From Octopus bimaculoides (lineage: Eukaryota), in contig NC_068984.1 of assembly GCF_001194135.2 (NCBI RefSeq), forward strand, positions 20,312,759 to 20,376,758: a stretch of 64,000 bases of DNA, read 5' to 3'. Both the position numbers and the translations under genes were made by a program. The notes under the pieces were generated by a model. That model worked only from the letters and a program-made list of their open reading frames with translations, was not told where the DNA came from and did not search any database. Shown here piece after piece: positions 36,251 through 64,000 of the stretch (positions are counted from its first letter, which is position 1; each line of letters starts with the position of its first letter).

Positions 36251-38119
36251 AAATAAGAACCTTCTAGTTCTGGCATCCTGTCTCTTCTGTGGCTGCATCA
36301 AAACCATAACTGATGATATAAACAATTTTATTAAAAACTTGTACTTTATTATTGAGTTCTTTTACTTGTTTGTAAATTCAAGTATATGCATATGTGCACA
36401 TACATACAATATAAAGTTGACTGTGATTTACTCTTTTTTGACAAAAGGTTGGACAATTACAATACTGATGATGGCTATTGAACCAGAAACACATGTCTAC
36501 AACTGTTTTTATGTCTCCAGACAACAAGCTTGATCTTTTTCTTAATGGCATGTCAACTGCAGAGAATTCATGAATCTTGAGATTATTTTCTTTCTCAGGA
36601 GATAATTTACATAAATCAAGAATTAATATTGCATTGTATATAGTATTTGATATACTTGTGTTTGTGTGTTTTATATATATATTAACTGAAGTGTACAGTA
36701 TTATATATCCATTATGGCTGATCTTACCAATCAGTTTCATGCTAGAGATTCAATGGGGTGTTAGGTAACAATCCAATTATGTAACCCAGCACTCATCAGG
36801 GGTAACCATTACAGAATAAAATATGGCAACTGCTCTCTATTGTTGGAGGTGAATAAACACATCCGGTTTGTGGATAGACATATATATTTATATGTGGATC
36901 AAAACAGTCTGATTCAAATTCATTGGTACTTTAAGTTTCAAAGTGTAATGCTAATCCCCAGCCATTGGAATATATATATATATATATATATATANNNNNN
37001 NNNNNNNNNNNNNNNNNNNNNNNNNNNNNNNNNNNNNNNNNNNNNNNNNNNNNNNNNNNNNNNNNNNNNNNNNNNNNNNNNNNNNNNNNNNNNNNNNNNN
37101 NNNNNNNNNNNNNNNAGAGAGAGAGAGAGAGAGATCAAAACAGTTTGATTCTTAAATTTCGCACCACTCTTGTTCAATAAACACTGGAGTTAAATTTGCA
37201 AAGCTGTTTATTTCCTCCTTTCGATTTTTTATGTTTATTTCAGCGGATTACCAAACTGTCAGTTTGGTCTCCTAGCTAACGGTATATACATATATACGAC
37301 GGGCTTCTTTCAGTTTCCCGTCTACCAAATCCACTCACAAGACTTTGGTCGGCTCAAGGCTATAGTAGAAGACATTTGCCCAAGGTGTCACGCAGTGGGA
37401 CTGAACCCAGAGCTATGTGGTTGGTAAGCAAGCTACTTACCACCCAGCTACTCCTACGCCTATAGTTAACCACTTATACAGAAAAAGTAAGCATTATACC
37501 GCCCAGCATAAATAAAAGTTAACTTCATTATAGTTTTTCTGTAAAGACCTATTCTGACATTAAATAAGTCAACTTCCCAACTGTATAGTCCTTTGTTCGG
37601 TCCCACTGCGTGACACCTTGGGCAAATGTCTTCTACTATATCATTGGGTTGACTAAAGCCGTAAGAGTGGATTTAATAGACGGAAACTGAAAGAAGCCCA
37701 TCGATATGTGTGTGGTCTTGTGTTTGTCCCCAGCTACCGAACTTAGCAAGGTACCACGCAGTGTGACTGAACTTAGGACCATGTGATTAGGTGCAAACTT
37801 CTCACCACACAGCCACGTTTATGTATTTGTTTTGCAAAGTTCCTGATGTGGAACAGTGTGTTGAAACAGATATTGTTATATTTCAGGATGGTCATTTTCT
37901 TTCTTTTTTTTTTTTCTTACCAAATAAACACATGCACTGTATATATTCGTTCAACACTTCAACTTCATTATTCTTATTTTATTGTCATTTGTCTGAAATC
38001 TTCCCTCACACATCCTGTTAACTCTCCAACGACACTCTGTCCCATGTATCACCTCCTGTTTTTGTTCAGTCCTTTAGAAAAAATGTAAACTAATTTGTTA
38101 AGTTCGAAAACTGGTCTAG

Positions 38120-38308: not shown

Positions 38309-38375
38309 ATGAGTGGCCACCATCGTGGAAATTTCTCTGTTACGACTGGAAGAGACGGGTCCCGTTCAGTTTATG
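38309..38375 (+). CDS. NXF1: NXF1 coding exon 1
   Basis: MSGHHRGNFSVTTGRDGSRSVY G|gtacgt; follows a CpG-rich promoter-like region. Confidence 0.7.
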
Positions 38376-47300: not shown

Positions 47301-50300
47301 TGAGTGAGACAGCATACCACCTGTTATCCTGGGAGTTGATCTTCTGATCTTGGCAGATTCTTCTCATTGGAGAAGAACCACAGCATGTCTGGCTCCAGTA
47401 GTTGTTTCAACTTGTTGATCAGCTTCTTAGTGAGTTTAAGTCACTTTTCCTGCATCACCTTGGGCAGAAATTGTTCCTTCCTCATCTTGTATGAAAAGTA
47501 GTAAATGTCCTCATGCACCACAGGCCTGATGAGCTTTTCATCCACACCTTTCTATTTTGTGGTGACATGGATCGACTTGCTGGGATCATTGTTGATGATC
47601 TGGATTTCATTGAATTCTGGTGTTCTGATGATATCAGATCAATGATCATGGATTTTCCTCTCAGCTGACATCAAATCCTGAATCTTCCAGCTCCTTTCTG
47701 AGCTTTTCCACCATCCCTCTGCTGATGTTGAGGATGTCTGAAATCTCCTTGTTTGTCCTTCTGGCACAGATTTCAAGGAAGACTCCATGTCCCTTCCACT
47801 GATTAGAGGGTTCAACATTTTCTATAGTCAATTATTCTGCCCCACTACACACACAATGGTTATTGTTTCTAAGAAGAAAAAGACTCACAATGAAAGTGAA
47901 AAGAATATGCATAAATTAGCAGTTGAAAATTGCGTATAAATACCGTCCACACCATGTTTGCCACTCTTCTCACATTGGACTAAAAAAAACAAAAAACAAG
48001 CAAAAAAAAATGAGACCATCCTTCATATTAAATGTAAATGTGGTAGCATGTCTGGCTTATTATTTTTATATAGCTCTTACAACATACAGGAGTGAACTTG
48101 TTAAGTGATTTGTTAACTGACAAGGAATATGATATAATGGGTAGTGACAAGTACTAATCTATCGGCTACTTATCTTTTGATCTAATAAACTTAATCATTT
48201 GCACTCACTAATATTTGATAATAAAGATGAAATTCAAAATCGAGGCTCGTACTTATTTTTTCTAATGGTGATTTAATTTTTCTGTTCTATATCTATAATT
48301 TATAATTTGAATTTTGATAAAGTTTTAAGGAGAAGAAAAACCTAAATATTTTGGTCAAATGTTTTCAATAAAATGTAAACTTCAATTGTAGTGTTGTACT
48401 AGCAGAAATACCTGGCATTGCTTGGGATTAAAATGGCATACTTTTTATTGTTTTAGTTATTTGTTATGTAACTGGGATCATGCTGGAGCACCACCTTTAG
48501 TCGAACAAATTGATCCCAGGACTTATTCTTTGTAAGCCTAGTACTTATTCTATCGCTGTCTTTTACCAAACTAAGTTATGAGGACGTAAACGCACAAACA
48601 TTGGTTGTCAAGCGATGGAGGAGGTACAGCATTGCCTTACTGGCACATTTGCTGGTGGCACTTGAAAAACAACATTGAGCTTGGTCGTTGCCAGAACCGC
48701 CTGACTGGCCTTTGTACTGGCGGCACGTGAAAAGCACCCACTACACTCTCGGAGTGGTTGGCATTAGGAAGGGCATCCAGCTGTAGAAACTTTGCCAGAC
48801 CAGATTGAGTCTGGTGCAGCTTCTGGCTCACCGTCAAACCCATGCCAGCATGGAAAGCAGACATTAAGTGAAGATGATATATACATATATATATNNNNNN
48901 NNNNNNNNNNNNNNNNNNNNNNNNNNNNNNNNNNNNNNNNNNNNNNNNNNNNNNNNNNNNNNNNNNNNNNNNNNNNNNNNNNNNNNNNNNNNNNNNNNNN
49001 NNNNNNNNNNNNNNNNNNNNNNNNNNNNNNNNNNNNNNNNNNNNNNNNNNNNNNNNNNNNNNNNNNNNNNNNNNNNNNNNNNNNNNNNNNNNNNNNNNNN
49101 NNNNNNNNNNNNNNNNNNNNNNNNNNNNNNNNNNNNNNNNNNNNNNNNNNNNNNNNNNNNNNNNNNNNNNNNNNNNNNNNNNNNNNNNNNNNNNNNNNNN
49201 NNNNNNNNNNNNNNNNNNNNNNNNNNNNNNNNNNNNNNNNNNNNNNNNNNNNNNNNNNNNNNNNNNNNNNNNNNNNNNNNNNNNNNNNNNNNNNNNNNNN
49301 NNNNNNNNNNNNNNNNNNNNNNNNNNNNNNNNNNNNNNNNNNNNNNNNNNNNNNNNNNNNNNNNNNNNNNNATGATAAATCAAGACCTTTCTACAAACGA
49401 TCCAAGTGGCATGGAAGAGGCGGTCGACGAAACAGAAAAGGTTCGTTTACTTTAATTGCATTAATTAGATTTCACAAATGTTAAACTACTAAAGTTATAT
49501 GTTGATTTTTTTTTTTTTCTCTCATTTTGATATAGCTTCTAAAGAAACTATATCAAGGGAGGTCAGCTCAGAACATTCAAAACATGCTATTGTTATGATG
49601 TCTTTTTTTTTTCCATGTTTGCACGAGCTGGAGATATCTTGTCACTTGTGCAGCCTCTATCATCTTATTTGTGAGATTCATCTGAGATCAGTTTTCACTG
49701 CTTCTGCTATGTCTTCTTTAGTCCCCCTTTGGGTCACTTGGCATTTCTTTACCCAACTGCCATCTTCACATGTCTGGTGTCTGTACCAGTGCAGTCTTCT
49801 TGTTTTGCATATGATGTCTGATTTCTCTTTGTGCCCAATTTTTATCTCAGCTTATTTGTGGTCCATCATTATCCAGAAGATAATGCTTACCACATATATT
49901 TATGTGTGTGTGTGTAGCATCATTAGTGTTATGTCTACTGTTTCATGCTTGGTTGGATGAAGACTTATTGGGTAAGTATTTTATGATTAGATGCTCTTGT
50001 TGCCAACTCTCATACCAGTTTATCAAGTAAGGAATTTTTATTCCTCTGGTCTTCGCAAAGTAAAAGTTCAGAACTACAAGATCATGGTATCACTGCATTT
50101 GATAAACAGTATCAAGCGAATTAAGCACTCGCATACTCTTGAACACTTACACATATGTGCGCAATATTTATCTGTGTATGCATGTAATAGGCTTCTTGCA
50201 GTTTCCCTCTATCTAAGATCCCAGTAGAAGAAATTTCAGAGCAGATAGATGATAAATCATGAAAAAAAAAACAAAAACAATGTCTCCACATGTTTTTGTG

Positions 50301-53300
50301 ATAAAATTCAAGGGCCCTGTTAAATGGCTTGGGCTAATGGCAGTGAAAAGTTGACTTAACAACATTACTGGGTAACATTATGGTGGGAAGAAATGGCACA
50401 TTTCATTATATTTGGAAAGAAAATTTAAATCTTTACTACATAGTGAACAGTCAAATATATGGTTCAGTTCAGTCCATTATTACTGAAGATTTGGGTGAGA
50501 CGCGTGTCTGCCAAGTTTGTGCCAAAACTTTCAGCCAACCAGAAAGACACTCGGATTTCGGTTGCACAAGATCTCCTTTATTGTGTTGAGAACGATGAAA
50601 GCATTTTGGAAACTTTGTTTAGGCCTCTGAGCAGGTATCGCCAAGCTTTTGGCAACATTTGATGCAGATTCTCTGCTCAACTTTCTCTGTCATGGTCATT
50701 ACAACAAACACATGCTATGCACATTACTTCCAAGCACTGCTGTAAGCAGTGGAAGTGAGCTAGAATGTTAAAACTTGGTGCACATGCACAGCAGAGTCTG
50801 AGGCACAATCTGTGCCAAGTGGCTTCACTCTGCATGCTTTAGCTTCGTTGCTATGGCAACAGTCCGGATACTTATTGATCAGACCACATATCTATCTACA
50901 TACACACACACACACACAATTTTCAGTTGGCTGAATTAACCTCAGTACTCTTGGTTTTTAAGCATGGTATTTATTCTGTCTATTTGCCGAATCTCTAAGT
51001 TTCAGGGAACCAACACCGGTTGTCAAGTAGTGGTGGGGGATGAACAAAGACACACACACAAACACAGTTTCTGTCTACCAAATACACTCACAAGGTTTTG
51101 GTCAGCCTCAGACTGTAGTAGAAGACACTTACCCAAGTTGTCACACAGTGGAACTGAACCTGCAACCATATGGCTGGGAGGCAATCTTCTTATCCTTACA
51201 GCCAAGCCAAACCTATCAAAAAATCTGTAAAAAGAAAGTCTAATTTAAATTTCAGTTCAGAACCATAAGATGGTTTAATTGTTCTGTTTCTTTTCTTCAG
51301 GTGGCGCTGGCGGAGCAAATCCTAGATCACATCTTGACGATGAAGATGATTTCCAAATGGATGATGATTTACCAGGAGTCTCAAATCAAAGACAGTAATT
51401 AATTTTTTTTCTTATGGATTGTTACATCTTAGACGTAAAGTTTGCAGTATTCAAATAAAATCATTTCTCAAAATGCTTTTTTATCTGTTAAACTCAGTTC
51501 ATTTTTAATCCTTTCAGTTGCTTTGGTTTGAGTTAATTTTGAAAAGAATGAAGGATTTAGTAAAGTAACATAATGTTCCAAGCACCAGCTTGGTACATGC
51601 GCTTGGAATATAAATTAACATGAAATTTTGATGGAAGGTTTTAATTAGATCACTTTGATTAGGAAGTTTGTATCATAGAAGCAGAGATGGTCTCAGACAA
51701 CTTAGTATTAAAAGGGTTAATAAATATAGAAGAAATACTATAACAAAGGGAATGAACCGTAAACTTTTACAAAATTCAAAGTATTTCAAGATGTGGCTTC
51801 TTTCTGCTAGTAAATTACTTGTGTATGACAGTTTTTATCTTTTACTTCTTTACTGCTGGGTAATGTGAATGATTTAATAGTAAATGCTCTCCAGTTATAA
51901 GCTGGTATCCAGATGAGTTCCATGGTTTCAGGTTCAATCCCACTATGCAGCACTTTGAGCAAGTGACTTCTGTAGCACTTGGCTGAAAGCTTTTTGAGTG
52001 GATTTGGTAGAAGGAAACTGAAAGAAACTCATCTGTATATGCATGTGTGCTTGTGTCTCCTTGATATTGCACACTGATTGTAAACAAACATCACCATCAT
52101 ACAAGCATTGTCATTTGTTTGAAACCTTCCATGAAAACATGTCCAGCCATTGTACTGTAATGGAAGTGAGAAGAAGGGAGATAAACTACATGACTATTGT
52201 CAGTCAGGAGTTTGAATAGAAACGGTATGACCAAGAAGGTGAAAGAAATATATAAAAAGTCAACATATATTAACCAGAATATATGCAATAATAATGTATT
52301 AACTCCTATATTTAATATTCTTTTATCAGTGTGCCTTATCGCAAAAATCACAGGAAGCGACCTCAGAATAAGATCTTGGAAATGGATAAAGTGCAGAACA
52401 GCGGTGAGTTTTATTTTCAATTGAAATCTTTTGTGAACTTTAAACAAGTAAAGAAACAAGTGTTTATAGAGAGAAAAATGTTTAATTTGCCTTAGTATTT
52501 GATTATAGTTCTCTTTTTACATTGTTATACATGGTCTGCACCATGTTATGGTTGTATAAACTGCATAAAAGCATCACATCAAAAAACATAAACATCCCAA
52601 ATATTCATTACTTCTGTGTAATTTAATTTAACAGTAGCATAGTTATTGATTTGTTACATGAAGTGAAGGTGTGTAGCTTCGTTAGGGTAATTGGCTCACA
52701 ATCATAAGGTCATGTGTTCGATTCCTGTCGGTGCGTTGTCTTTAAGCAAGACACTTTATCTCACATTGCTGCAGTCCTCTCAGCTGTAAATTCAAAGGGC
52801 TAACCTTGTCACATACTGTGTGATACTGAATCTCTCTGAGAACCACATTAAGGGTGTGTATGTCTGTGGAGTGCTCAGCAACTTGCATGTTAACCCTTTA
52901 GCATTTAAACCGGCCATATCCGGCCAAAAGTATTCTGCCTGTTTTATGTTCAAACTGGCCAGATCTGGTCTCTCATACCAACCCTACAATATTGTTATAA
53001 AAATTAACAGCTACCTCATCAAAATCTCATAGCGACAAGATAATGCATGATTAGTTCAAGACAATGTGGATAAAAAAAGCATTAATTTTGGCAGAATAAT
53101 GCAAACACTAAAGGGTTAATTTCACAAGCAGGCTGTTCTGTTGACTGGATCAAATGGAACATTTGTCGTCGTAACTGACTGAGTGTCATAAAAAACATAC
53201 ACGAGATATTTGAAATTTGTTTGAATAGAAAGTTTAATTTTTAGATTAATTAAATCTACAACTGACACCATTTTCAATTCAGAATTCTATATAATATTCT

Positions 53301-56300
53301 CGCATATAATTTTCTACTGGTACTCAAATTTCATATGAACCTAATTGTTTATATTTTCAGGTCGATTAAAACGTCTTGGCTTACCGGTACACAACAAACA
53401 TTCTGATAATAGCTGGTATCGTGTAAAGGTATATAAATTTTTCCTTTTATAAAATCCATCGAAATACAAATCACTTACCTCTTTATGTAACTTTATAAAC
53501 TGCTATATTAGTATTTCATAAAAACAAGTTTTTGTTTTTGAGTTTTTCTATTTTTATGAAATTAAAATTGTTATATGATACAAGAACAAATTTTGTATGA
53601 AATGATGTACTTTTACAGCATGCACTTAGTGGCTTGCTGGAAAGAAAACAAAAAAATCCTAAAAACCTCTCCATTGTAATTATTGACAGGCAAGCAATAT
53701 GAGGTTGAAGTGGTGGGTGTTGCCAGCCATTTAGTTGTCCTTGGTACATAACTATTTGATTCAGTGTAATGATATAGGTTCAACTTGAAAGTTGTTCCAG
53801 CTATCAACTGCTTATTAAAGCTGTTCTACACTTATTTCTGTGTATAAGGGGGATGTAAATTGTAAAAAGATTATGGAAGATATATATAGCATCGTCCTCC
53901 TCATTTAACATCCGGTTTTTTTTTATGCTGATGTGAAGTAGATGGTTAGACAGGATCTGTCAAGTTGTGGACTTCACCAAACTCTTGTGTCTGCTTTAGT
54001 ATGGTTTCTGTGATTGGATGCCGTCCTAATGTTGACCACATTACAGAGTGTACTGGTACTTTTTATGTGGCACCAGCACCATTGAGGTCACTAAATAATT
54101 TGCAGCACGTTCCCCTACCACTTGGCATAAAAGCCACCTCCTCCTACCTCAGGTAGGAGGAGATGGCTTTTATGCCAAGTGATGAGAGGTTAAAGTATGA
54201 TAAAGGGATATGAACAGGTGATTTGCTCTAGAGGAAATACTTGGTTAACCCAGTTGGAAAGGAAATGATATCTGGGATTGGACCTGAACAATGTTGGTCA
54301 ATTTAATCAATTACAAATCAGAATTCTTCGGGTATTCTGGTATTTAAGAGAGTTTCTTAACCACAAGACTATGCTTGCATATATTAAATGAAGAGTCATT
54401 GGGTTGAGTTCCATAAATGTTGAAATTTAATACAACTGAATGTCGATTAGATGAAGTTGAATCATACAAATTGTGAATATAGTATAGTGACGGTTGGAAA
54501 ATTTTCCTCATCTTTTTATTGTAATTACTATTCAAAATAAATGGCTGAGAGACTAAGATAAATAATTGATAAATTGTTGGCAAACTTATCATGCTCAGTT
54601 GGACTTGTATCTAATTTCACTTATCTCTTAATTTTTTTCCCCTAATATTTGTAAAATCAGTATCAATATTATATACCATGATTGATAAATTTACTGCTTG
54701 ATTTTTATATGACTAATGAGATTTAAAAAAAAAATATTTTAACATCCAGACTGAAATTTTTTTTTCTTTTTCTTTTTTTTTTATAGATACCATGTAGACA
54801 GAAGTTGGAAAGGCATTTCATTATTAGAGAAATCGAAAATTGTATCAATATGACATTTCAAGTATCATTTGTGAGTCTCTTAGTTACATTAATATCTATT
54901 TAATTTATTAACTGTATGAGAATTTTTTCTTCCTAGTCAAATTATATTATCCTTCAAAAAGCTGTGAATGAATTTATTTAAAATGTTATTTTTTAAAATT
55001 ATATTCTTGGTGTTTCTTACAATTTCCCTCTATGAAACAGCTGTCAAAGTGAGTTTACCCAGTTGCTGCCCTTGTGAAGCTATTGTGTTGGAGGGATTTT
55101 ATTTTATTTTTCATTTGTTTAAAGCCACTGTTTGTTTATTCATTTTTTTTTTGTGTGTGTAGTGGTCTGAGTTAAGTGTTGTGGTTTGGAAATAGGAATG
55201 TGTAGGTTAGTGATGTCAAAGATTAGCCATTCTACACCCAGCTTTCAGATTCTGGGAATTTAACAGTGTTGAGTGAAAATGATTGTATATGTTGGTAGCA
55301 GTAGGGATACCTTCAAGTCCAAAATATTAGTGCTTTTGTCTTCCCTAAGACTTGAGTTTTTAAATTTTCCCATTGCTATTGGAGTGTTTGATGGCTGGAA
55401 AGAGTTACTATTTTGGTGGCTGATCTTCAAAGAATGTTTGAGAAAGTTGTTTGCTTGGTGTTACAGTGTGATTATATTATTTTGAAGTTACTGTGACATG
55501 GAGGGTGGTATAGTTTTTGTTGATGATGGTGGTTATTCAATATTTGTAGTATGTGTTCATTTGACCTGCAAGAAGTTGTAACCAAAGCTACAAGCATAAC
55601 ATAGTGGTAATTGTAGAAATAACTGAAACCCAATGTAACAATAATTATAGAAAGGCCTGAACTTTGAACTCAGTAGTTGAGTTCCTTAAACTCAGAACTG
55701 TTTTCCTTCATTTAGTGACAAAATTGTGAAATAAAATAACTGTCTGTTAATTTTGGTAAATTTAGTGGTTTTTGTTTTGTCAATCACTCATTATTCTACA
55801 TTGATTTCCAAGTGTGATCATTTATTATATTAAACTGCATTGAAACTTATTCTAGTAAATGTATGAAAAATGTGATTGTATGATTAATCACTTTTCCATT
55901 GGTGGTTATCTTCCATGTTATATTTTTATGTATAAATATATATATATAAATACATATACATATATATATATATATATATATAAAAAATCATAGTCATCTC
56001 TGAGTTTTGAGATGGTTTGTGAGATCAGATACCACCTACATCAATGTAGAAGTGCCGACAGGATTTTATCAAGTACATAAACTCTGTGCGATTCTTTTAC
56101 AACAGTGTGATTGGTTAGACTTATTAAATATTTTGTTATCTGTATCCTACAGGAGAAAGTGAGAAAGAAATTATTTTGTCTATATATATATATATATTTA
56201 CTTCAACTTTTCAGTTTAAAAGTGAACGTGGCAGTTGTTGTTTTTATGTCCAAGATAAAATTACTGCAGATGCTATTCGTCAAGTGGATAAGAAGATAAT

Positions 56301-56995
56301 AATGCCTGATGGATTCAAAGTAGGTTTGCTTTGTCATTATTGGAATATATCAATTATTTCTAAAAGTATTTGTCAAAAAACAAGTGGGTGGGGGTGGGGG
56401 TTTTAATTTACGAGTACCATTTCCAAATCCTGTACAGTAGGTATGTGAATGAGTGCTAAGAGGTTTCTAAAAATGCTATGGTGACTGTCATGGGAGTGGT
56501 GGAGGCACTAATTCCATTTCTTCACTCCTGCAAATGTGTGCTCAAATGGTTGTTGGTCTGAAAGTGACATTCTGATAAAAATCCTTAAGTGGAAATATCC
56601 TTCAATTTCTTTTTGCAATTTTGTTCCATTTTCTAAATTAGCTATTAAAATGAAAGATTTTTATATTTTAATGTTTTACAACCATTCTAACTAGTTTACC
56701 ACATATATTTTTAGTTGGCTGTAATTGTGAAACCTTCTTGTGCACCTGGCTTAACCCTGGATGATAGAACACTGGAAAAACTAAAGGTAATAGTCGTTTC
56801 TTAAAAGTTCATTAAATAAATTTCACGCTTGTTTTGTGATTTTCTGCATTTCCATCTATTTGTCAGTAATCTAATATCTATAATACTATAAACTTTCATG
56901 TTTAATTATAAATTACTCAGAATGAAGAAATAGTACTGAATCTTTTGATGCCTCATATGTCAAAATTGGTAACTCGGTTTTAGAATGCAAAAGGA

Positions 56996-57040
<45 letters not shown>

Positions 57041-60000
57041 ACTTCTTTCAAACTGAAAATATTATCTCACATTACAATAGAGACATAATAGTGAAATAGT
57101 GTAAGAGATAAGAGATCGCTCTAGGCTTGCATTAGGCAAGAAGTTGGAAATTTTTTTGGCCCATGACACTCCATGGACCTTGGCTTTTGTACTTCATGAC
57201 TGTTGCTTTAAGTATTTTATTTTGATTTTCACTGACATAGTGGTAAGAACAACAGGACACGTAACAGTAATTTCGAATAAAAATAAAAATGGAAGTTTTA
57301 ATCATCTGATGAACAGGCAAACATTACAAAAATAGCGATTCTCACTTTGAAACTAGACAATTTTGAAAATCTTTTTAGATACGGAACGTCTTGCTCTCTC
57401 ATGTATCCATGTTTAAAATTTCAGCGTGATCGGATGAACAATACTTGAGTTATAATAAGTGCACAAACAGATAGACAGAATGAGATTTATATATTAGATT
57501 AGAGAAAAGATATTATTTGCATTGTATAGCCTGCTGTTTTAAAAGGAGATGCAAGTGCTACGAAGGCATTCATCATGAGTATCCTCAAGATTCTAATGAT
57601 TCCTTCACTATTTACAAAATAGCAGTCATTGCTTGAGAAGGCATACAAGTGTTTAAAAGGCAAGAAAAAAAAATCCCAACAAAATTTATCTGATGGATAA
57701 ATAATGGTGGGTCTTGTTTAACAGATAAAATTGATAATGATACACAATAAATTTTTTCTACTTTTAGCTTTGCCTGAGTGAACGCTATGATTCCTCTATC
57801 AAGATGCTTCGACTAAACAGCTTGTATCAAGATGAAAGTAAGTACATTGTATAATCTTTTAACACTTGTTTCGTTGAATGAAATAAAAAACATTTTAATG
57901 GATGAATAATTAGTAAGGAATTTAACAGCAAGAATTTTTATTCTTACACAGTATGCAGTTTAATTTCTTTTAATTTTATTCTGTGTTTATATGTAATGGA
58001 AACTTGCATGCTCATGCATCAGGAATGAAAAAAATATATTATTGGCCATTATCATTTGCTTCAGGCATGTACTTAAGCCTTTCAATTCTATTTCTTGAAA
58101 AGAATATATGATGTACTTTTTAAATAGATGTCATCTTTTGTATCAAGTGAACACCTTGTGTCTGCAATATTGGAGTTATAGATAACATATATCTCCTGTC
58201 TTGATACAATCGCTATCACCATCATCATCCATTTTCCATACTGGCATGGGTTTGATGGTTTGACAGGATCTAGCAAGCTGCAGGGTTTCATTGAACTCCA
58301 GTATTAGCATTGGCATGGTTACTATGGCTGGGTGTCCTTCCTTATGCCAACAACTTTGCTGTGTGGTGGGTACCTTTTTTTTTTTTTTTTGCATCACTGG
58401 CACGAGTGAAGTTTACCAGGTGTGAAAGATAGGAAAAGGACCCCCCCCCCACTTCGTGGGGTAGTATTTGAGATGGGGAGAGGTCTTTATACAAGCACAG
58501 GTATCTTGTAATAGTGGAGATGCATGGTTACCCCCACATATAAAGGGTTGGTGAGAATAGCTAGGAAGGAGCTGATGGGATGCCAGAGCAAACTCTTTAG
58601 GTGATGAGGTTTTGATAATTGATTTACGATCTCTTGCAACAAAATTGAGGATATTTTCATGGAGTAGTTGATTAATTTATTTCATTAGAGATTTTGGTTT
58701 TAGTGTTGAAAAACAAAAATTGTGTTGAAGTCATCTGTAATAAAAATAGAAAATTTTTTTCACTCTCTGAAGAAAGTAAGTATTAAGTGACCAATTATTT
58801 TGTAATAATAGTAAAACAAAAAGTACTTTTAGTAACTCCCTAAGTTTATGTACAAGGATTAATCATTGTCATTTTCATAGATTATCTTTTTTTTTCTTTT
58901 TATCTTATTAATCTCAACTTCCTTTCTCTTTTCTTTTCCAATATATTAGTGTTGAAAGGTACTGATTCGTTCATGGCTTTGAATCGACCACAAGTGATGA
59001 CTAATGTTGTTACAATAATCAAAGAAAACATACCAGAAGTAAGAATTTATTTTATTCTCATTCCTCCATGTCTATTTAAAGCTGTTAGCTCTCCTGAAGT
59101 TTCTATCTACTACAAAATCTCAGAATCCTTAATTTCTATTTTATTTGCTACATTTTCAACTTTAGATTTAAAGTGTCATTAACCCTCAGAACCCCAGTGG
59201 CCACTATTCCGGCTGCTAGCCGCAGATGTAAATACTCCAGCGACCACTTTACCAGGTGCCACATTGTACTGTTTACAAATACCCCAGCGGTCGCTATTAC
59301 GGCCGCCGGCTGCAGATACAAATACAAATTCCAGCTGCTAGCCACAGATACAAATACACCAGTGACCGCTTAACCGGCCAGTATTTTCTGCATTGGAAAA
59401 CCAGACAGTAACTGCCGGTTTGATTGGCACCACAGATGCCAGTATTGGTGATTAAAAAAAAAGAAGTGGTAAGGATAATGTTGCCCTCAATTTGGCATTT
59501 TAGTGACACTGTTGATGATGATGAAACAATATTAAGTGAGGAGTCATTTTGACTCTTTTACCCAGGGAAGCTGGGGTGAGGGTGCTGAGAACAACAGGTA
59601 TCTGGGGTTCAAACGGTCAAGGAACATTATTTACAAAGAAATCTGTATTAGTTCATATGTTATTTGTGAATATTGTGGTGCTGTCTCATAATTAATTAAT
59701 TAATTACTGGTTGGGGAAAAAGTTGAAGAGGTTTTTTTTATAGCTTACTGTGGTAGGAATATTTCATGTACTTGTTTGTAGCTGCCCTAACCTAGGCTGG
59801 GCAACATAATTGACCTCCACATCTGAACTGATGTAATTGACCTCCACACATGAACTGGTTTACTTAAGTGGTGTAGCTGTTTGGTTACACTGTTATGAAG
59901 AAATATTTTCAGACTTTTACTTGCATAAAAATGGGCATGCGTGAATATCAGTTACTTGATTGAACAGATTAGTTTAGTAAATGGATATGTCATTTGTAAG

Positions 60001-60924: not shown

Positions 60925-61919
60925 ATAAATATTTGCATTATTTGTATATTTGCAGTTGGTATCTCTTGATATTAGTTGTAACAAGTTGATGACTTTGGAA
61001 TATTTATCTCCACTAGTCTCATACACTCCTCATTTGAAAAACTTGAATCTTGGTAAAAATACGGTAGGTTACCCTAAAATTTTGTTGTTTAATGAAATGC
61101 ATTGTAATAAAAAAAAAATGTGATAGGTGGATTAGCAGAATTGTATTGGCAAAATGCTTTGTATTTGTTTTAGCATTTTATGAATCCCACAAATATAATT
61201 CTACTGTACCTTTAAGTTGAGCAAAGCATTGCATCTGAAATTTGGTAAACAGAAACTATGTGGAAGCTAATTAGAACTGTTGCCATTGTAGTGTGGTCAA
61301 CTTAATCTGCCATTTTGTTTAACATCACCACCACCACCACCACCATTTGGTGTTCCTTGGATGTCTTTAGCATAATTCACACTAGTGAAGCATTCAGGTC
61401 AGGTGTCCATTTTAGGAAGGCAAAGATCAGTTTTGCCTTTCATGCTCTAGGGTCAATGCTATCGACTAACCAATGCCTTCTCTTCAAAGTTGCTAGCATT
61501 ATGTCTAAATTAGAAATGATTATTTCATGTTTTAACAAAAATAGTTGAGGTATGATTTATGTTTAAAATAAAAATTATAATAATTAAACTTTGATTTGTT
61601 TCAACATTTAGTTTGCTGATTTCTTACAAACATTTCTTACATCAGGATGATTTTGTTTACTTTTTTTATGAATTCTTTTTCTTGTTAATTGTTCAGCTGT
61701 ATTAAATTAATGAATGTGATAGCTTTAACTGCCATAGAAGCTACTTACTTTACTCTTTAATGCATTATTATCACTTATATATCTTATCCTTTTTAACTTA
61801 TTGTCTTAGCTAAAGTCTATTGAAGAATTAGAGAAGATTAAAGACTGGAAACTCGATGAATTGATCCTCGAAGGCAATGAATTCTGTAATAGATTTAAAG
61901 ACCATTCAGTTTATGTCAG
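38309..61919 (+). CDS. NXF1: Nuclear RNA export factor 1 (NXF1/TAP), 5' part; exons 38309-38375, (gap)-49440, 51301-51394, 52330-52403, 53361-53428, 54787-54870, 56215-56319, 56715-56786, 57768-57837, 58950-59038, 60956-61063, 61810-61919; continues past the window
   Basis: GT-AG exons in compatible phases give an RG-rich N-terminus, PRSHLDDEDD, RHVPY, SWYRVK|IP, RRM-like FYVQD..TADAI, ERYD, ALNRPQVM...IIKENIPE, and LRRs LVSLDISCNKL..LNLGKN|LKSIEELEKIK...LILEGN, all matching NXF1. Confidence 0.93.
41296..41469. mobile_element. CpG-rich fold-back MITE with TA ends
   Basis: Long inverted arms tactactaa.gcagcacgg.cccgaacgcgcagtc...tagtcgtgagtggtcgatccta. Confidence 0.7.
42980..43305 (-). mobile_element. 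CR1-type LINE ORF2 C-terminal fragment
   Basis: YPERL...SLEHRRLRENMINMYK...KLERSHCRLNIRSCFFGQRV...FKNRLD. Confidence 0.85.
45023..45420 (-). mobile_element. Young RTE LINE 3' end
   Basis: High similarity to 997-1294 and 5846-6125. Confidence 0.8.
46789..47956 (-). mobile_element. Near full-length decayed Tc1/mariner (DD37D-like) transposon with TIRs
   Basis: TA+CAGGGTGTGGACG left end and CGTCCACACCATG right end; frameshifted transposase motifs WFFSNEKN, DQKINSQDNRW, KTQAWLSENF, IWPPNLADCNPL, VWSAVEQETN. Confidence 0.85.
48620..48880 (+). mobile_element. RTE LINE 3' end
   Basis: aagcacccactacactctcggagtggttggc...catgccagcatggaaagcagac tail. Confidence 0.75.
48895..49371. other. Assembly gap hiding the NXF1 exon 2 acceptor; other gaps at 1295-1438, 15740-16111, 17280-17491, 26617-27438, 36995-37115, 40221-40230
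   Basis: N runs, most flanked by microsatellites or repeats. Confidence 0.98.
49372..49440 (+). CDS. NXF1: NXF1 exon 2 (5' end hidden in N-gap)
   Basis: DKSRPFYKRSKWHGRGGRRNRK G|gttcgt; phase 1 fits the next exon. Confidence 0.7.
49620..49880 (-). mobile_element. Old RTE ORF C-terminal fragment
   Basis: TRRLHWYRH...EDGSWVKKC resembles RRLRWYGHV...DSWVKKC. Confidence 0.55.
50455..50890. mobile_element. Rearranged mariner (DD34D-type) relic: internal fragment on + joined to the 5' end on -
   Basis: + strand: SVQSIITEDLG/RRVSAKFVPKL...VAQDLLYCVENDE; - strand: TIR tatgtggtctgatcaataagtatccggac and MTEKVEQRICIKCCQKLGDTCSE from ATG 50693. Confidence 0.8.
51301..51394 (+). CDS. NXF1: NXF1 exon 3
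   Basis: ttcttcag|GTGGC...GACA|gtaatt; NPRSHLDDEDDFQMDD. Confidence 0.85.
51505..51721. mobile_element. Second TTAA-ended MITE family (diverged)
   Basis: ttaatcctttc...aaaagggttaa ends. Confidence 0.55.
52330..52403 (+). CDS. NXF1: NXF1 exon 4
   Basis: tttatcag|TGTG...AGCG|gtgagt; VPYRKNHRKRPQ. Confidence 0.8.
52890..53119. mobile_element. piggyBac-type TTAA MITE nested in a SINE
   Basis: ttaaccctttag...ctaaagggttaa; the SINE sequence resumes on both sides (gcatg|ttaa|tttcacaagcagg). Confidence 0.82.
53361..53428 (+). CDS. NXF1: NXF1 exon 5
   Basis: ttttcag|GTCGA...AAG|gtatat; RLKRLGLP...SWYRVK. Confidence 0.85.
54787..54870 (+). CDS. NXF1: NXF1 exon 6 (84 nt)
   Basis: tttatag|ATACCA...TTT|gtgagt. 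Confidence 0.87.
56215..56319 (+). CDS. NXF1: NXF1 exon 7 (105 nt)
   Basis: ttttcag|TTTAAA...AAA|gtaggt; FYVQDKITADAIRQVDKKI. Confidence 0.88.
56715..56786 (+). CDS. NXF1: NXF1 exon 8 (72 nt)
   Basis: ttttag|TTGGCT...AAG|gtaata; LAVIVKPSCAP...EKLK. Confidence 0.87.
57768..57837 (+). CDS. NXF1: NXF1 exon 9 (70 nt)
   Basis: cttttag|CTTTGC...GAAA|gtaagt; LCLSERYDSSIKMLRL. Confidence 0.88.
58950..59038 (+). CDS. NXF1: NXF1 exon 10 (89 nt)
   Basis: tattag|TGTTG...GAA|gtaaga; MALNRPQVM...IIKENIPE. Confidence 0.9.
59179..59620. mobile_element. piggyBac-like non-autonomous element with GC-rich internal repeats
   Basis: Left ttaaccctcagaaccccag; right ctggggttcaaacggtcaa (15/19 reverse-complement match). 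Confidence 0.65.
60168..60460. mobile_element. Two RTE 3' fragments joined head-to-head (inverted pair)
   Basis: aaccactttacaggtgc / gcacctgtaaagtggtt centre with extended imperfect arms. Confidence 0.75.
60956..61063 (+). CDS. NXF1: NXF1 exon 11 (108 nt, LRR)
   Basis: tttgcag|TTGGTA...ACG|gtaggt; LVSLDISCNKL...LNLGKN. Confidence 0.9.
61810..61919 (+). CDS. NXF1: NXF1 exon 12 (110 nt, LRR; precedes the cassette intron)
   Basis: gtcttag|CTAAAG...GTCAG|gtaatg; LKSIEELEKIKDWKLDELILEGNEFC. Confidence 0.9.
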
Positions 61920-63893
61920 GTAATGTAAAGGAATGAGTTGTCTTTTGTATCACCAGTTTTTCCAGCTGTGTTTGCTTTTCTCATGCTGCACACAGAAAAA
62001 GGGTTTCAAATCAGAGCTGTTTAAACTTATCTCTTGACCAGTAATTTTTTTCAGTATGAAGGTAGGAGTAATGGATAAGTAATTTGCCAGATTTTTTTTT
62101 TTTTCGGTAAATTAACTTTTTTTAAAGATTTCATGGTTCTTTGAAGTGTAGTTACATTTACATCCTATAATTTATATTTTCTTTATTAAATAATCTATTT
62201 TAATAGTAAACAGTAATTTCCATCATTCATTATATATTTAAAGTATTGGAATCTATTTGAAGTTGATCAGTTTCTCTTGTGATTAGTAAACCTGAACATA
62301 CAAAGTTGAAGACTTGTTATAAAACAATTAGAGGAAGTGAAGTGAGTCCTAGAGAGGACCACTGAAGATTTTAGTGTTGTGTAGTGTGGGGCAGGGTGCA
62401 CATGGAACCCCTTCTCTCTACTAACAGGAAGAGTTGACATAAGCACTGTAAATAACAAATTACAAACTAGTTTTTAGTGCCAAGTGGTTGTCTACCTATT
62501 TACAGAACCGGACCATTTGACTCTAAACACGGCACAGTACTGAGGCAGGATACAAAATACTCAGCTACTTGTCTGGAACTTTATTGATATGGATCTTCAT
62601 GCTGTCTTATTTAAAACCCATGTTTGACAGTAAACATACCATGAAATACTTGAATTGCCCTCCTTTCCTACAGTTACTTGCAATAAACCTCTTTAACTGG
62701 GTTATATTTAATTGCAATAGAATAAAAACTACTTTATTGAGCATATGAATATTTTCAAATGCAATTGAAACCAGGAATCAAAATGAAATTATTGAAATTC
62801 ACCATATGAATGCTACATCATGTTTATGTAGATTACATATATTTTTCTTTCTTACTGTGTATACTTAATTCTATCCCAGTGCAGATGCCCTTGGTGCACA
62901 ATCCTAGTATGTGTATGTGTTTGAGTGTGAACAGAAGTAAACATTCCTTATAAATGTTGAACAACATGAAAGCATTTTTGGAGGAACACTGCTGAAACTG
63001 TCCTTCTAGGCTACTCACAGATGCCAGTGTAAAATGTTTGAGGCTTCATGTGACATGGTTCAGCTAGAAATAAATTCTACCACAAACATATCTCCTTTGT
63101 ACAGTGCTCATGCAGTTACACATCCACTCTTATATGTGTAAGGCTTTGGCTTGAAATATCTTCCTTTGTACGAACGTTTCTTTTCATTTAATGTATTTAA
63201 TTATTTTCACCTTTTCTTTTTAGATATTTTTTCTAAGGATTACCACCAAGTTACCTCTGAATTTTTTTCAAGCAGTATTTGAAGTGTAAAGCATACAAAA
63301 TTGGGAACTTAACTATTATTTTTGTTTCGTTAAAGAACATTTAAAATAGAGAAGTATAAAAATACAGTGGGATTGCTACTCATATATATTATTAATGCAG
63401 TCTGTTAGTGATAACTACAGCTTGTAGATGAAAAAGAAACGACACTTCAGTATTGTTGTAAATGTTACTGATGTCACTAAACAGAGATGCATACCTATAT
63501 GCACATGTGCACACGATGCTTACACATATAAGTACATTCATGCATACACATACTTGAACATATAACATACGTGTACAACATGTTAAGAAACTGACAATGC
63601 ATATTAAATATCAACTTTGTATTTATCAATCACCCTATGCTACCAAAAGTTTTCTGCCTCCCTTCATGGATCTAAATGTACACATGTACTGGCACACAAC
63701 ACCACACTGATAAACATACATGTGCAGGTACTTAGAAACAAGTAGTTACACAAACGCACTGACACACCTGTAAACAGATATAGGCATGCAGATATATACA
63801 CATAGGCCTGTATGTTTATGCACTCATATAAACATACAGGGAGTTAAACAAAGCAAATCTCATTGATTTGATAAATACACATTAATGAAATAA

Positions 63894-63945
<52 letters not shown>

Positions 63946-64000
63946 TTATAATCATTTTGCATCTTCTTTTACATGCTGGTGGTATTGAGCAGATATTCTG

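What the first reader, a model, noticed from the sequence alone, without database searches (positions are those of the whole stretch)
61810..64000. NXF1 'cassette' intron with an immediate stop: candidate autoregulatory retained intron in a cephalopod
Seen: a 110-nt LRR exon (61810-61919) ends GTC AG|g taa, so retention reads ...SVYVR-stop (TAA 61921-61923). That would truncate NXF1 after the RRM/LRRs and remove the NTF2-like and UBA domains. The expected 37-nt exon (AIRERFPKLLRL-like) is not found by 64000, so the intron exceeds 2.08 kb. Established: the 110-nt exon / retained intron / 37-nt exon block is conserved in nxf1 genes (human intron 10 carries a CTE and yields short NXF1; Drosophila sbr retains its equivalent intron). 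Inference: the same export-coupled intron-retention circuit operates in this mollusc.
Basis: partly seen in the sequence, partly recalled or inferred. Interest (0 to 1): 0.75.

Follow-up and report, generated by a model that had tools for sequence, protein, structure and literature searches.

The report
Octopus NXF1 retained-intron cassette, with CTE
The window ends in the Octopus bimaculoides mRNA-export gene NXF1, at the start of the one intron that vertebrates deliberately leave unspliced, and further along that intron (beyond the window) octopus, cuttlefish, scallop and amphioxus carry a recognisable copy of the RNA export signal (CTE) so far described only in vertebrates.

Summary
61810-61919 (+) is the 110-nt twelfth coding exon of Octopus bimaculoides NXF1; the window is identical to GCA_001194135.2. 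It ends AG|GTAATG, so read-through gives ...SVYVR-TAA and a 337-aa protein with only the RRM and LRR domains. The 37-nt exon is not in the window. In the same assembly it lies 7,091 nt downstream, and it is exactly 37 nt in four cephalopods, scallop, amphioxus and three vertebrates.

The "immediate stop" is not evidence in itself: a phase-2 intron with a GTAA donor always gives one, and intron 3 of this gene does too.

Three independent tests do support the interpretation:
- Between O. sinensis and Argonauta this intron is the conservation outlier among 13 introns (28 % alignable vs 0-11 %; 28/30 at the 5' end; length kept).
- RNA-derived contigs of a decapod cephalopod are spliced at the upstream junctions but read through this donor.
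- A covariance model trained only on three vertebrate CTEs finds one sense-strand hit inside this intron in cuttlefish, scallop, amphioxus (E about 1e-8), Argonauta and both Octopus species (E 1e-5 to 1e-3), and no other hit at E<=10.

The octopus element lies about 4.2 kb past the window end and has diverged loop bases. Retention, export and translation in Octopus remain untested.

The parts
38309..38375 (+). NXF1 coding exon 1 (ATG at 38309)
   Evidence: tblastn with Argonauta NXF1. Boundary transferred from O. sinensis and verified by translation.
49372..49440 (+). NXF1 coding exon 2. Its acceptor is hidden by the N run 48895-49371.
51301..51394 (+). NXF1 coding exon 3. It is followed by the only other phase-2 intron (donor gtaatt), which also gives an immediate TAA.
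52330..52403 (+). NXF1 coding exon 4
53361..53428 (+). NXF1 coding exon 5
54787..54870 (+). NXF1 coding exon 6 (start of RRM)
56215..56319 (+). NXF1 coding exon 7 (RRM)
56715..56786 (+). NXF1 coding exon 8
57768..57837 (+). NXF1 coding exon 9
58950..59038 (+). NXF1 coding exon 10 (LRR)
60956..61063 (+). NXF1 coding exon 11 (LRR)
61810..61919 (+). NXF1 coding exon 12: the 110-nt 'cassette' exon (last LRR), orthologue of human exon 10. It is among the best-conserved exons at DNA level.
   Evidence: Identity is 99.1 % to O. sinensis, 89.9 % to Argonauta, and 84.5 % to a decapod transcript against 69-83 % for other exons.
61920..61931 (+). 5' splice site GTAATGTAAAGG with the in-frame TAA at 61921-61923. 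It is invariant in five cephalopods. It lacks the consensus +5 G and contains a second GTAAAG.
61920..61971 (+). Conserved 5' flank of the intron (octopod level)
   Evidence: The blastn alignment to Argonauta runs 52 nt into the intron. Identity is 28/30 and 47/60, against 7-25/30 for the other 12 introns.
61920..64000 (+). First 2,081 nt of intron 12 (the cassette intron, orthologue of vertebrate NXF1 intron 10). In this assembly the whole intron is 7,091 nt, including a 3,492-nt N run that starts at window-equivalent 64001. The CTE-like element is at window-equivalent 68242-68315 and the 37-nt exon at 69011-69047, both outside the window.
   Evidence: No CTE-like match inside this segment with either model.
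63180..63302 (+). Single-copy conserved island inside the intron: a branch-point/polypyrimidine/AG (3' splice-site-like) motif followed by about 65 conserved nt ending in a second T-run plus CAG. Possibly a decoy 3' splice site or an alternative (poison) exon. Function unknown.
   Evidence: 99 % identical to O. sinensis where the flanks are about 91 %. 83 % identical to Argonauta where the flanks do not align. One copy per locus.
63480..63945 (.). Low-complexity CA/TG-rich stretch and an (AT)n microsatellite. Not conserved, and the source of spurious mir-297-type Rfam hits.

Best explanation
61810-64000 holds coding exon 12 (110 nt) of Octopus bimaculoides NXF1 and the first third of its intron 12. 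That intron is the orthologue of vertebrate NXF1 intron 10 and of the retained intron of Drosophila sbr.

Proposed mechanism:
1. A fraction of NXF1 transcripts keep this one intron while all others are spliced. Candidate control elements are a conserved, sub-optimal donor (GTAATGTAAAGG), conserved intron flanks and internal islands such as 63180-63302.
2. The retained intron carries, about 0.7 kb before its 3' end, a stem / 6+6 internal loop / stem / hairpin element homologous to the vertebrate NXF1 constitutive transport element (CTE).
3. Full-length NXF1-NXT1 binds this element directly and exports the unspliced mRNA.
4. Translation stops at once (R-TAA), giving a 337-aa short NXF1 that keeps the N-terminus, RRM and LRR but lacks the NTF2-like and UBA domains.

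Shown here: gene identity, exon/intron anatomy, the stop, the domain loss, intron-specific conservation, selective read-through of this donor in decapod-cephalopod RNA, and sequence-plus-structure homology of the intronic element to vertebrate CTEs.

Inferred: retention in Octopus itself, NXF1 binding and export, escape from nonsense-mediated decay, translation, and any feedback on NXF1 level.
For: Orthology and anatomy.

Cassette block (110 nt / intron / 37 nt) verified in O. sinensis, Argonauta and Acanthosepion, O. bimaculoides, a marsupial, a frog and a pike, and scallop and amphioxus.

Conservation control: of 13 O. sinensis-Argonauta intron pairs, intron 12 has 28 % of its length in collinear significant alignments against 0-11 % for the others. 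It has the best 5' end (28/30) and 3' end (26/30), and its length is kept (6201 vs 6360 nt) while other introns differ up to about 3-fold.

Transcripts: P0002 (337 aa, ending ...DYVR) is encoded on 9 RNA-derived Logan contigs from two run series. Three are spliced at the upstream junctions that align to the window's exon boundaries yet continue 470-890 nt past cag|GTAATGTAAAGG. Six break exactly at the junction. A full-length 637-aa form sits in the same 90 % cluster. That species is a decapodiform.

Across animals: 14 of 143 NXF cluster representatives end exactly at this junction residue and about 17 more end within 20 non-exon residues. No other downstream junction shows a comparable pile-up.

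CTE: the only block conserved among three vertebrate introns has the invariant motifs GACGGGTAAG and CAACCTAAGACAG. The cuttlefish intron has both exactly, flanking a hairpin. Model R1, built from the three vertebrates only, finds cod at 72 bits (positive control), amphioxus 39.5 bits (E 1e-8), cuttlefish 39.2 bits (2e-8), scallop 38.7 bits (2e-8), Argonauta 29.7 bits (1e-5), O. bimaculoides 26.3 bits (2.6e-5) and O. sinensis 22.9 bits (1e-3). Every hit is on the sense strand inside the cassette intron, with no other hit at E<=10 in the roughly 360 kb searched across these calls.

The cephalopod hits coincide with the one block that BLAST had already found conserved between octopods and cuttlefish.

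Structure: 91 % of cells are paired (0 of 500 shuffles reach this; slid controls 34-54 %), with 10 of 20 pairs showing compensatory changes. Independent MFE folds of the octopus, cuttlefish, scallop and marsupial elements give the same architecture.

Literature: the mammalian and fish mechanism is in PMC4338338 and PMC5170612.
Against: - No Octopus RNA evidence. The exact 337-aa product of O. bimaculoides, O. sinensis and Argonauta is absent from the protein collection. That look-up is also negative for vertebrates, so it is insensitive.
- The Octopus element is the weakest hit. Its 3' loop side reads UAUGCC where vertebrates and cuttlefish have UAAGAC, and GGGUAAG has become GGGUCAG. Binding may be altered or lost.
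- Thermodynamic z-scores of the single folds are modest, -0.6 to -1.9.
- The covariation counts come from an alignment fitted to the model.
- Contigs that read through the donor could come from partly processed pre-mRNA of a slowly spliced 6-8 kb intron.
- Part of the pile-up of protein ends may come from gene predictors splitting at a long intron with an early stop.
- In cephalopods the element sits at 0.83-0.89 of the intron, not nearer the 5' end as in vertebrates.
- Conservation near the 3' end could also serve recognition of the 37-nt micro-exon.
- Nothing of the CTE lies within the window.
Confidence: 0.62

Rival explanations
1. Unproductive retention. The intron is retained in a regulated way, but the transcript is detained in the nucleus or destroyed by nonsense-mediated decay. 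Retention would then simply lower NXF1 output, as in classic RNA-binding-protein autoregulation, and no short protein would be made. The CTE-like element in Octopus would be a decaying relic.
For: The stop at 61921-61923 lies far upstream of many exon junctions, which is the textbook NMD configuration; PMC5170612 calls the mammalian isoform 'a prime candidate for NMD'. The octopod loop bases have diverged and score lowest. A conserved 3' splice-site-like island (63180-63302) fits decoy-type control of splicing.
Against: The element is still under constraint in octopods. It is alignable across Octopus and Argonauta within otherwise unalignable intron, and keeps the fold with compensatory changes. 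In the decapod, the intron-retaining form was abundant enough to be assembled in at least three runs. In mammals the equivalent mRNA is exported and translated (PMC5170612).
Confidence: 0.2
2. Ordinary constitutive intron. Intron 12 is removed efficiently, the early stop is incidental, and the conservation reflects other needs: splicing enhancers for the 37-nt micro-exon, a transcriptional enhancer, or an embedded non-coding RNA. The database 'short isoforms' would be pre-mRNA or annotation artefacts.
For: The immediate stop is automatic for a phase-2 GTAA intron. Micro-exons typically have conserved flanking introns (general knowledge). Another intron of this gene holds a conserved block that is probably a snoRNA-type RNA. 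No Octopus retention evidence was found.
Against: This does not explain a vertebrate-CTE homologue at E about 1e-8 in the same intron of cuttlefish, scallop and amphioxus, with weaker hits in three octopods. It does not explain the invariant 12-nt donor region in five cephalopods, or the lack of comparable conservation in intron 13 on the other side of the micro-exon. Nor does it explain transcripts that are spliced upstream but unspliced here, in several independent runs.
Confidence: 0.1
3. The CTE-like hits are not inherited from a common ancestor. They would be convergent, or seeded by a mobile element carrying a CTE-like sequence that landed in the same intron in different lineages.
For: CTE-type elements are carried by some retroelements (literature: PMC4338338 discusses the viral-cellular relation). 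The position within the intron differs between cephalopods and other lineages.
Against: There is one copy per locus, always on the sense strand and always in the same orthologous intron, in six invertebrate and four vertebrate genomes. No extra copies occur in about 360 kb. Divergence within cephalopods is graded, and the flanking stems are alignable.
Confidence: 0.05

Closest known systems
Mammalian NXF1 (TAP) intron 10 with its CTE and the short sNxf1 protein (PMC5170612; PMC4338338)
   Same: Same gene and same intron, between a 110-nt and a 37-nt exon with a phase-2 junction. Retention truncates after the LRR domain. The intron holds a stem / 6+6 loop / stem / hairpin element with GACGGGU...ACCUA...CAGG. 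In a marsupial I verified the block and the element directly.
   Different: The vertebrate donor is GTCAGT, so the short protein gains an intron-encoded tail: 18 residues in human and rodent per PMC5170612, 8-18 in my three vertebrates. Octopus stops at once. The vertebrate intron is 1.5-3 kb with the CTE at 0.34-0.55 of its length; the Octopus intron is 6-7 kb with the element at 0.88-0.89. The Octopus loop bases differ at two to three positions and the 5' splice-site-like GGGUAAG is lost.
Zebrafish and coelacanth NXF1 intron-10 CTE (PMC4338338), the deepest conservation reported in the literature I could search
   Same: A single half-CTE in the orthologous intron, recognisable by sequence and fold. 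Cod and pike score 72-83 bits with my model.
   Different: The cephalopod, scallop and amphioxus elements lie outside vertebrates and score 23-40 bits. Function has been shown for zebrafish but not for any invertebrate.
Drosophila sbr (Dm nxf1) intron-retaining transcript (Ivankova et al. 2010, Gene 458:11, as cited in PMC8151460)
   Same: An invertebrate nxf1 gene with a transcript that retains an intron, enriched in the head and nervous tissue. I recall from memory only that this is the 'cassette' intron between the 110-nt and 37-nt exons.
   Different: No CTE-type sequence is described there in the papers I could read, and I did not examine a fly locus. Insect NXF short forms ending ...Y[IV]R are in the protein library.
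CTE of simple type-D retroviruses (MPMV/SRV-1; PMC4330390)
   Same: The same kind of NXF1-binding internal-loop RNA that lets an intron-containing RNA leave the nucleus.
   Different: The viral element is a two-fold symmetric duplication in a viral genome; the cellular one is a single lobe in the NXF1 intron. I made no comparison with viral sequence here.
Decoy-exon or decoy-splice-site control of intron retention (general concept, from memory)
   Same: The conserved, single-copy 3' splice-site-like island at 63180-63302 inside a retained intron resembles what that model predicts.
   Different: This is purely a resemblance. There is no transcript or binding evidence, and the donor-like GT of Octopus is not kept in Argonauta.

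Membership tests
NXF1 orthologue | Spliced product aligns end to end with NXF1 and carries the Tap-RNA_bind (RRM) and LRR_NXF1 domains, followed in the full gene by NXF_NTF2 and TAP_C (UBA) | tested here: met
   The 337-aa window product is identical to XP_014787544.1 residues 1-337.
NXF1 'cassette' block (110-nt exon / intron / 37-nt exon) | Exon of exactly 110 nt encoding the last LRR and ending in phase 2 (..AG|) | tested here: met
   61810-61919, 110 nt, phase 2
NXF1 'cassette' block (110-nt exon / intron / 37-nt exon) | The next exon is exactly 37 nt (1 + 12 codons, xVRKKFPKVLKL-type) | tested here: met
   Not in the window. In the same assembly it is at window-equivalent 69011-69047 and is 37 nt. 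It is also 37 nt in three other cephalopods, scallop, amphioxus and three vertebrates.
Retained-intron NXF1 isoform (sNXF1 type) | Mature transcripts that are spliced elsewhere but keep this intron | tested here: inconclusive
   Met in a decapodiform cephalopod: contigs L001-L003 are spliced upstream and read 470-890 nt into the intron. No evidence either way for Octopus (the look-up is insensitive).
Retained-intron NXF1 isoform (sNXF1 type) | Early in-frame stop in the intron, giving an N-terminus + RRM + LRR protein without NTF2L and UBA | tested here: met
   TAA at 61921-61923; 337 aa. The stop itself is expected for phase 2 plus GTAA.
Retained-intron NXF1 isoform (sNXF1 type) | The short protein is actually made | not testable with these tools
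   Needs proteomics or an antibody.
NXF1-type constitutive transport element (CTE) | Lies on the sense strand inside the cassette intron | tested here: met
   O. bimaculoides L017 30434-30507, which is window-equivalent 68242-68315 and 695 nt before the 3' splice site. It is NOT within the window segment 61920-64000.
NXF1-type constitutive transport element (CTE) | Significant match to a sequence-plus-structure model of vertebrate NXF1 CTEs | tested here: met
   Vertebrate-only model R1 gives O. bimaculoides 26.3 bits (E 2.6e-5), O. sinensis 22.9, Argonauta 29.7, cuttlefish 39.2, scallop 38.7 and amphioxus 39.5, with no other hit at E<=10.
NXF1-type constitutive transport element (CTE) | Stem / internal loop of 6+6 nt / stem / hairpin ('53-nt core', PMC4338338) | tested here: met
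   The MFE fold of the octopus element alone gives this architecture. In the ten-species alignment 91 % of cells are paired and 10 pairs have compensatory changes.
NXF1-type constitutive transport element (CTE) | Inner-loop bases and the adjacent 5' splice-site-like GGGUAAG unchanged (invariant among mammals, PMC4338338) | tested here: inconclusive
   Cuttlefish and scallop keep GACGGGUAAG, and cuttlefish also keeps CAACCUAAGACAG exactly. Octopus has GACGGGUCAG and ACCUAUGCCAGG, and Argonauta has GACGGGUGAU and ACCUAUGGCAGG. Amphioxus, a strong hit, also varies here (GGGUUUG; ACCUAGGCCAGG).
NXF1-type constitutive transport element (CTE) | Binds NXF1-NXT1 directly and drives export and expression of an intron-containing RNA | not testable with these tools
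   Needs binding and reporter assays.

The most novel reading that the evidence does not exclude
The NXF1 CTE, and with it the loop in which NXF1 exports its own intron-retaining mRNA, is not a vertebrate invention. It would date to at least the last common ancestor of protostomes and deuterostomes. It survives with exact 10-13-nt motifs in a cuttlefish and near-exact ones in a scallop and amphioxus, and as a diverged but structurally intact copy in octopods. That would make it one of the oldest conserved intronic RNA elements known. The coral sampled has the exon cassette but no detectable element.
Probability: 0.7. Interest if true: 0.8.

Novelty: new member of a known kind. Interest (0 to 1): 0.66.

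Why it matters
NXF1 is the main mRNA export receptor of animals. In mammals its intron-10 isoform is the model case of a cellular mRNA that leaves the nucleus with an intron, through a CTE, and encodes a neuronal short NXF1. In the literature I could search, this element is described only from mammals to fish (PMC4338338, PMC5170612).

If the octopus, cuttlefish, scallop and amphioxus elements are functional homologues, the self-export circuit is ancestral to bilaterians. That would argue that the short isoform has an old, essential role. It would also provide natural sequence variants (octopod loop changes, with possible protein co-variation) for dissecting CTE recognition. Cephalopods, with large nervous systems and heavy RNA processing, would become a useful comparison for the neuronal role proposed in rodents.

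For genome annotation, it explains why NXF1 models are often truncated or split at this intron.

Tried and rejected
- Word-indexed protein search with the concatenated window peptide found nothing. The exhaustive HMMER library then found 395 relatives.
- A minus-strand hit at 11092-11121 ('TTLPPTQGSY', E 4.9 with a from-memory human probe) suggested a second NXF copy. It did not recur with the Argonauta protein, so I dropped it as chance.
- Rfam on the window intron, the O. sinensis intron and the whole window gave nothing near threshold; the only hits were low-complexity mir-297-type matches. Rfam also fails to detect a true marsupial CTE, so this negative is uninformative.
- CTE motifs and both covariance models find nothing in 61920-64000 (best 8.8 bits, filters off), in the decapod contigs, or in the coral locus.
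- Exact look-ups of predicted short isoforms for three octopods, a cuttlefish-like species, scallop, amphioxus and three vertebrates were all absent. This is uninformative, because species in which retention is expected are also negative.
- The window versus O. sinensis cannot rank introns: everything aligns at 88-94 %. Argonauta had to be used.
- Reading 63180-63302 as a complete cassette exon is not supported. The acceptor-like part is conserved, but the Octopus donor-like GT is not kept in Argonauta.
- My first automatic exon refinement mis-joined several exons. I replaced it with boundary transfer from O. sinensis plus a translation check.
- I recalled a 2013 paper on the 'cassette intron' by the Drosophila group, but it is not in the held library. 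I could not check whether it examined invertebrate CTEs.

Full report
WHAT IS AT THE COORDINATES. The sequence at 61810-61919 (+) is a 110-nt exon bounded by ...ttattgtcttag| and |gtaatgta. It translates as LKSIEELEKIKDWKLDELILEGNEFCNRFKDHSVYV, and its last two bases (AG) plus the first intron base give R, followed by TAA at 61921-61923. With a close protein probe I mapped 12 coding exons on the + strand from an ATG at 38309, all with AG/GT boundaries; the acceptor of exon 2 is hidden by an N run. The spliced product, stopped at the intronic TAA, is 337 aa. It is identical to residues 1-337 of Octopus bimaculoides NXF1 (XP_014787544.1). The window is base-for-base identical to assembly GCA_001194135.2, CM046604.1, over the overlap compared, window 38000-64000 (locus L017, offset -37808). 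Full-length orthologues carry Tap-RNA_bind, LRR_NXF1-5, NXF_NTF2 and TAP_C, and the short product keeps only the first two.

THE MISSING 37-NT EXON. Nothing in 61920-64000 resembles it: the best 12-mer scores 14 of 58, below the window-wide 99.9th percentile of 15. In the same assembly the exon (A ACT GTA AGA AAG AAA TTT CCA AAA GTT TTA AAA TTG, flanked by ag and gt) lies 7,091 nt after the donor, at window-equivalent 69011-69047. That length includes a 3,492-nt run of N that begins exactly at window-equivalent 64001, and I cannot tell whether it is a scaffold gap or masking. The orthologous intron is 6,201 nt in O. sinensis, 6,360 nt in Argonauta hians and 7,653 nt in the cuttlefish Acanthosepion pharaonis, and the next exon is exactly 37 nt in each. 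I also verified the 110/intron/37 block directly in a marsupial, a frog and a pike and in scallop and amphioxus. A coral has the phase-2 junction and a 37-nt exon as well.

THE 'IMMEDIATE STOP' IS NOT A SIGNAL. A phase-2 junction followed by GTAA, GTGA or GTAG always reads as a stop. In this gene the only other phase-2 intron (intron 3, gtaatt) also stops at once, and every one of the 12 introns would stop within 1-47 codons. Scallop, amphioxus and all cephalopods have GTAA-type donors here and give R-stop. The three vertebrates all have GTCAGT and read 8-18 residues into the intron, which matches the 18-residue tail of mammalian sNxf1 (PMC5170612). The consequence, a truncated protein, is real. 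The stop just carries no weight as evidence of function.

TEST 1: IS THIS INTRON MORE CONSERVED THAN OTHERS? O. bimaculoides against O. sinensis is too close to discriminate, since all introns align at 88-94 %. Between O. sinensis and Argonauta, with identical sensitive settings for 13 intron pairs, intron 12 is the clear outlier. 28 % of its length lies in collinear significant alignments, against 0-11 % for the others. The first 30 nt are 28/30 identical (others 7-25) and the last 30 nt are 26/30 (others 13-23). Its length is kept while other introns differ up to about 3-fold. The first 12 intron bases, GTAATGTAAAGG, are invariant in five cephalopods spanning the octopod-decapod split. This donor lacks the consensus +5 G. 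Inside the window a second island, 63180-63302, is single-copy. It is 99 % identical between the two Octopus species where the flanks are about 91 %, and 83 % identical to Argonauta where the flanks do not align. It consists of a branch-point/polypyrimidine/AG motif plus about 65 nt ending in another T-run-CAG. The donor-like GT of Octopus is not kept in Argonauta, so I read it as a 3' splice-site-like regulatory element (a decoy site or part of an alternative exon) of unknown function.

TEST 2: ARE THERE TRANSCRIPTS THAT RETAIN IT? An exhaustive HMMER search returned, besides full-length NXF1 proteins, many that end one residue after this exon. Of 143 cluster representatives containing the exon, 14 end exactly at the junction residue and about 17 more end after 1-20 non-exon residues. 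The histogram of C-termini has 40 ends at this position and no comparable spike at any later junction. Some of these are genome annotations (a beetle, an ant, a pseudoscorpion, an elephant shark cDNA) and could in part be prediction artefacts. Others exist only in assemblies of sequencing runs. The closest, P0002 (337 aa, ending ...DYVR), is encoded on nine short contigs from two run series. Three of them are spliced at the upstream junctions that align to the window's exon boundaries yet continue 470-890 nt past cag|GTAATGTAAAGG. Six break exactly at the junction, as expected at a branch in an assembly graph. A 637-aa full-length form is in the same 90 % cluster. That species is a decapodiform, 84 % identical to cuttlefish NXF1. 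For Octopus itself I found no evidence either way: exact look-ups of the predicted short isoforms were negative, but they were equally negative for vertebrates, so the test is insensitive.

TEST 3: IS THERE A CTE? Rfam finds nothing, but it also misses a genuine marsupial CTE, so it has no usable model. I therefore derived the element empirically. Among the cassette introns of marsupial, frog and pike exactly one block is conserved. It has the invariant motifs GACGGGTAAG and CAACCTAAGACAG around a variable hairpin, matching the published description of a 53-nt core with an inner loop and an adjacent 5' splice-site-like sequence (PMC4338338).

A plain motif scan found both motifs, exact, in the cuttlefish intron: GACGGGTAAG-TTCTTCC-AGAA-GGGAAGA-CAACCTAAGACAG. 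Diverged versions sit at the homologous place in Argonauta and O. sinensis. This is the same block that BLAST had already shown to be the only one shared between octopod and cuttlefish introns.

A covariance model built from the three vertebrates only (R1) then gave these hits:
- cod, positive control: 72 bits
- amphioxus: 39.5 bits, E 1e-8
- cuttlefish: 39.2 bits, E 2e-8
- scallop: 38.7 bits, E 2e-8
- Argonauta: 29.7 bits, E 1e-5
- O. bimaculoides: 26.3 bits, E 2.6e-5
- O. sinensis: 22.9 bits, E 1e-3

Each is the only hit in its locus, on the sense strand, inside the cassette intron, with no other hit at E<=10 in the roughly 360 kb searched across these calls, including the whole window. The coral locus has none. 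On the ten-species alignment 91 % of cells pair (0 of 500 shuffles reach this; slid controls 34-54 %) and 10 of 20 pairs show compensatory changes, notably C-G to U-A swaps between vertebrates and cephalopods in the central hairpin. That alignment is fitted to the model, so I also folded single sequences: octopus, cuttlefish, scallop and marsupial each give the same stem / 6+6 loop / stem / hairpin on their own, though with modest z-scores.

CAVEATS ON THE OCTOPUS ELEMENT. It is outside the window (window-equivalent 68242-68315, 695 nt before the 3' splice site), and no CTE-like match exists in 61920-64000 even with a broader model and filters off. It is the most diverged copy: GGGUCAG instead of GGGUAAG, and UAUGCC instead of UAAGAC on the 3' side of the loop. 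Amphioxus, a strong hit, also varies at these positions. In cephalopods the element sits at 0.83-0.89 of the intron, against 0.34-0.55 elsewhere. Whether Octopus NXF1 still binds it is unknown.

MOST LIKELY MECHANISM. This is the orthologue of the vertebrate NXF1 intron-10 system. A share of transcripts keeps intron 12. The retained intron presents a CTE-type element to full-length NXF1-NXT1, whose RRM and LRR domains are the minimal CTE-binding unit (PMC4330390). The mRNA is exported and translated to a 337-aa short NXF1. The anatomy, the conservation, decapod retention and element homology are shown. Retention, binding, export, NMD escape, translation and any feedback in Octopus are inferred. 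I put this at about 0.6. The main rival, at about 0.2, is regulated but unproductive retention with a decaying element. An ordinary intron gets about 0.1 and non-homologous origin of the element about 0.05.

NOVELTY. The cassette block, retention in mammals, fish and flies, and the vertebrate CTE are all known (PMC4338338, PMC5170612, PMC8151460). I found no report of a CTE in an invertebrate NXF1 gene in the searchable literature, with the caveat that some papers of the Drosophila group are not held. The octopus locus is therefore a new member of a known kind. The wider point, a CTE homologue in molluscs and amphioxus, would move the origin of the element from vertebrates to the bilaterian ancestor.

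Noticed in passing
window 55972-56106 (+), intron 6 of NXF1: A block about 90 % identical from Octopus to Argonauta and cuttlefish, better conserved than the exons. It is a sub-threshold match to the H/ACA scaRNA family SCARNA14 (27.2 bits vs gathering score 40, E 0.012) and ends in an ACA box. It is probably an intronic H/ACA sno/scaRNA.
   Followed up: partly
window 33818-34483 (-): First coding exon of an RWD/IBR-domain (RNF14-like E3 ligase) gene, 80 % identical in protein to the gene next to NXF1 in Argonauta. It is arranged head-to-head with NXF1 (ATG 38309), so the synteny is conserved.
   Followed up: partly
window 1295-1438, 15740-16112, 17280-17491, 26617-27437, 36995-37115, 40221-40230, 48895-49371; L017 26193-29684: Runs of N. 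The run at 48895-49371 abuts exon 2 and hides its acceptor. In the full locus a 3,492-nt N run begins exactly one base after the window's end, so the middle of intron 12 is unknown for this species.
   Followed up: no
L013, L014, L015 vs L017, L010-L012, L018, L019 (donor of the cassette intron): All three vertebrates have GTCAGT, so read-through gives RSV... and 8-18 residues. All cephalopods, scallop and amphioxus have GTAA.., so read-through gives R-stop. The intron-encoded tail of sNxf1 looks like a vertebrate novelty.
   Followed up: partly
L012 24458-24504; L018 11744-11809; L019 6128-6200; L011 28263-28330; L010 33546-33619; L017 30434-30507: CTE-type elements in the NXF1 cassette intron of cuttlefish, scallop, amphioxus, Argonauta and two Octopus species. 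The relative position is 0.83-0.89 of the intron in cephalopods and 0.34-0.55 in the others. A coral (L020) has the 37-nt exon but no hit.
   Followed up: yes
window 61810-61919 and orthologues: The 110-nt exon is among the best-conserved exons at DNA level, including synonymous sites near its 3' end: 99 % to O. sinensis, 90 % to Argonauta, 84.5 % to a decapod. This hints at splicing-regulatory constraint on the exon itself.
   Followed up: partly
P0152 (Logan contig, same cluster as P0002): A 208-aa ORF that departs from NXF1 after ...AADKK. It reads as a +1 frameshift in an A-run, which suggests an assembly or sequencing error rather than an isoform.
   Followed up: no
window 11092-11121 (-): 'TTLPPTQGSY' is 8/10 identical to human NXF1 368-377 but was not found with the cephalopod protein. 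I treat it as chance.
   Followed up: yes
UniRef A0A0L8I847 / A0A0L8I9H0 (O. bimaculoides, 277 and 238 aa): Two shorter UniRef O. bimaculoides entries named 'NTF2 domain-containing protein' sit in the same 90 % cluster as full-length NXF1. This suggests an annotation that called the C-terminal part as separate models, possibly split at the long cassette intron. I did not retrieve or align them.
   Followed up: no
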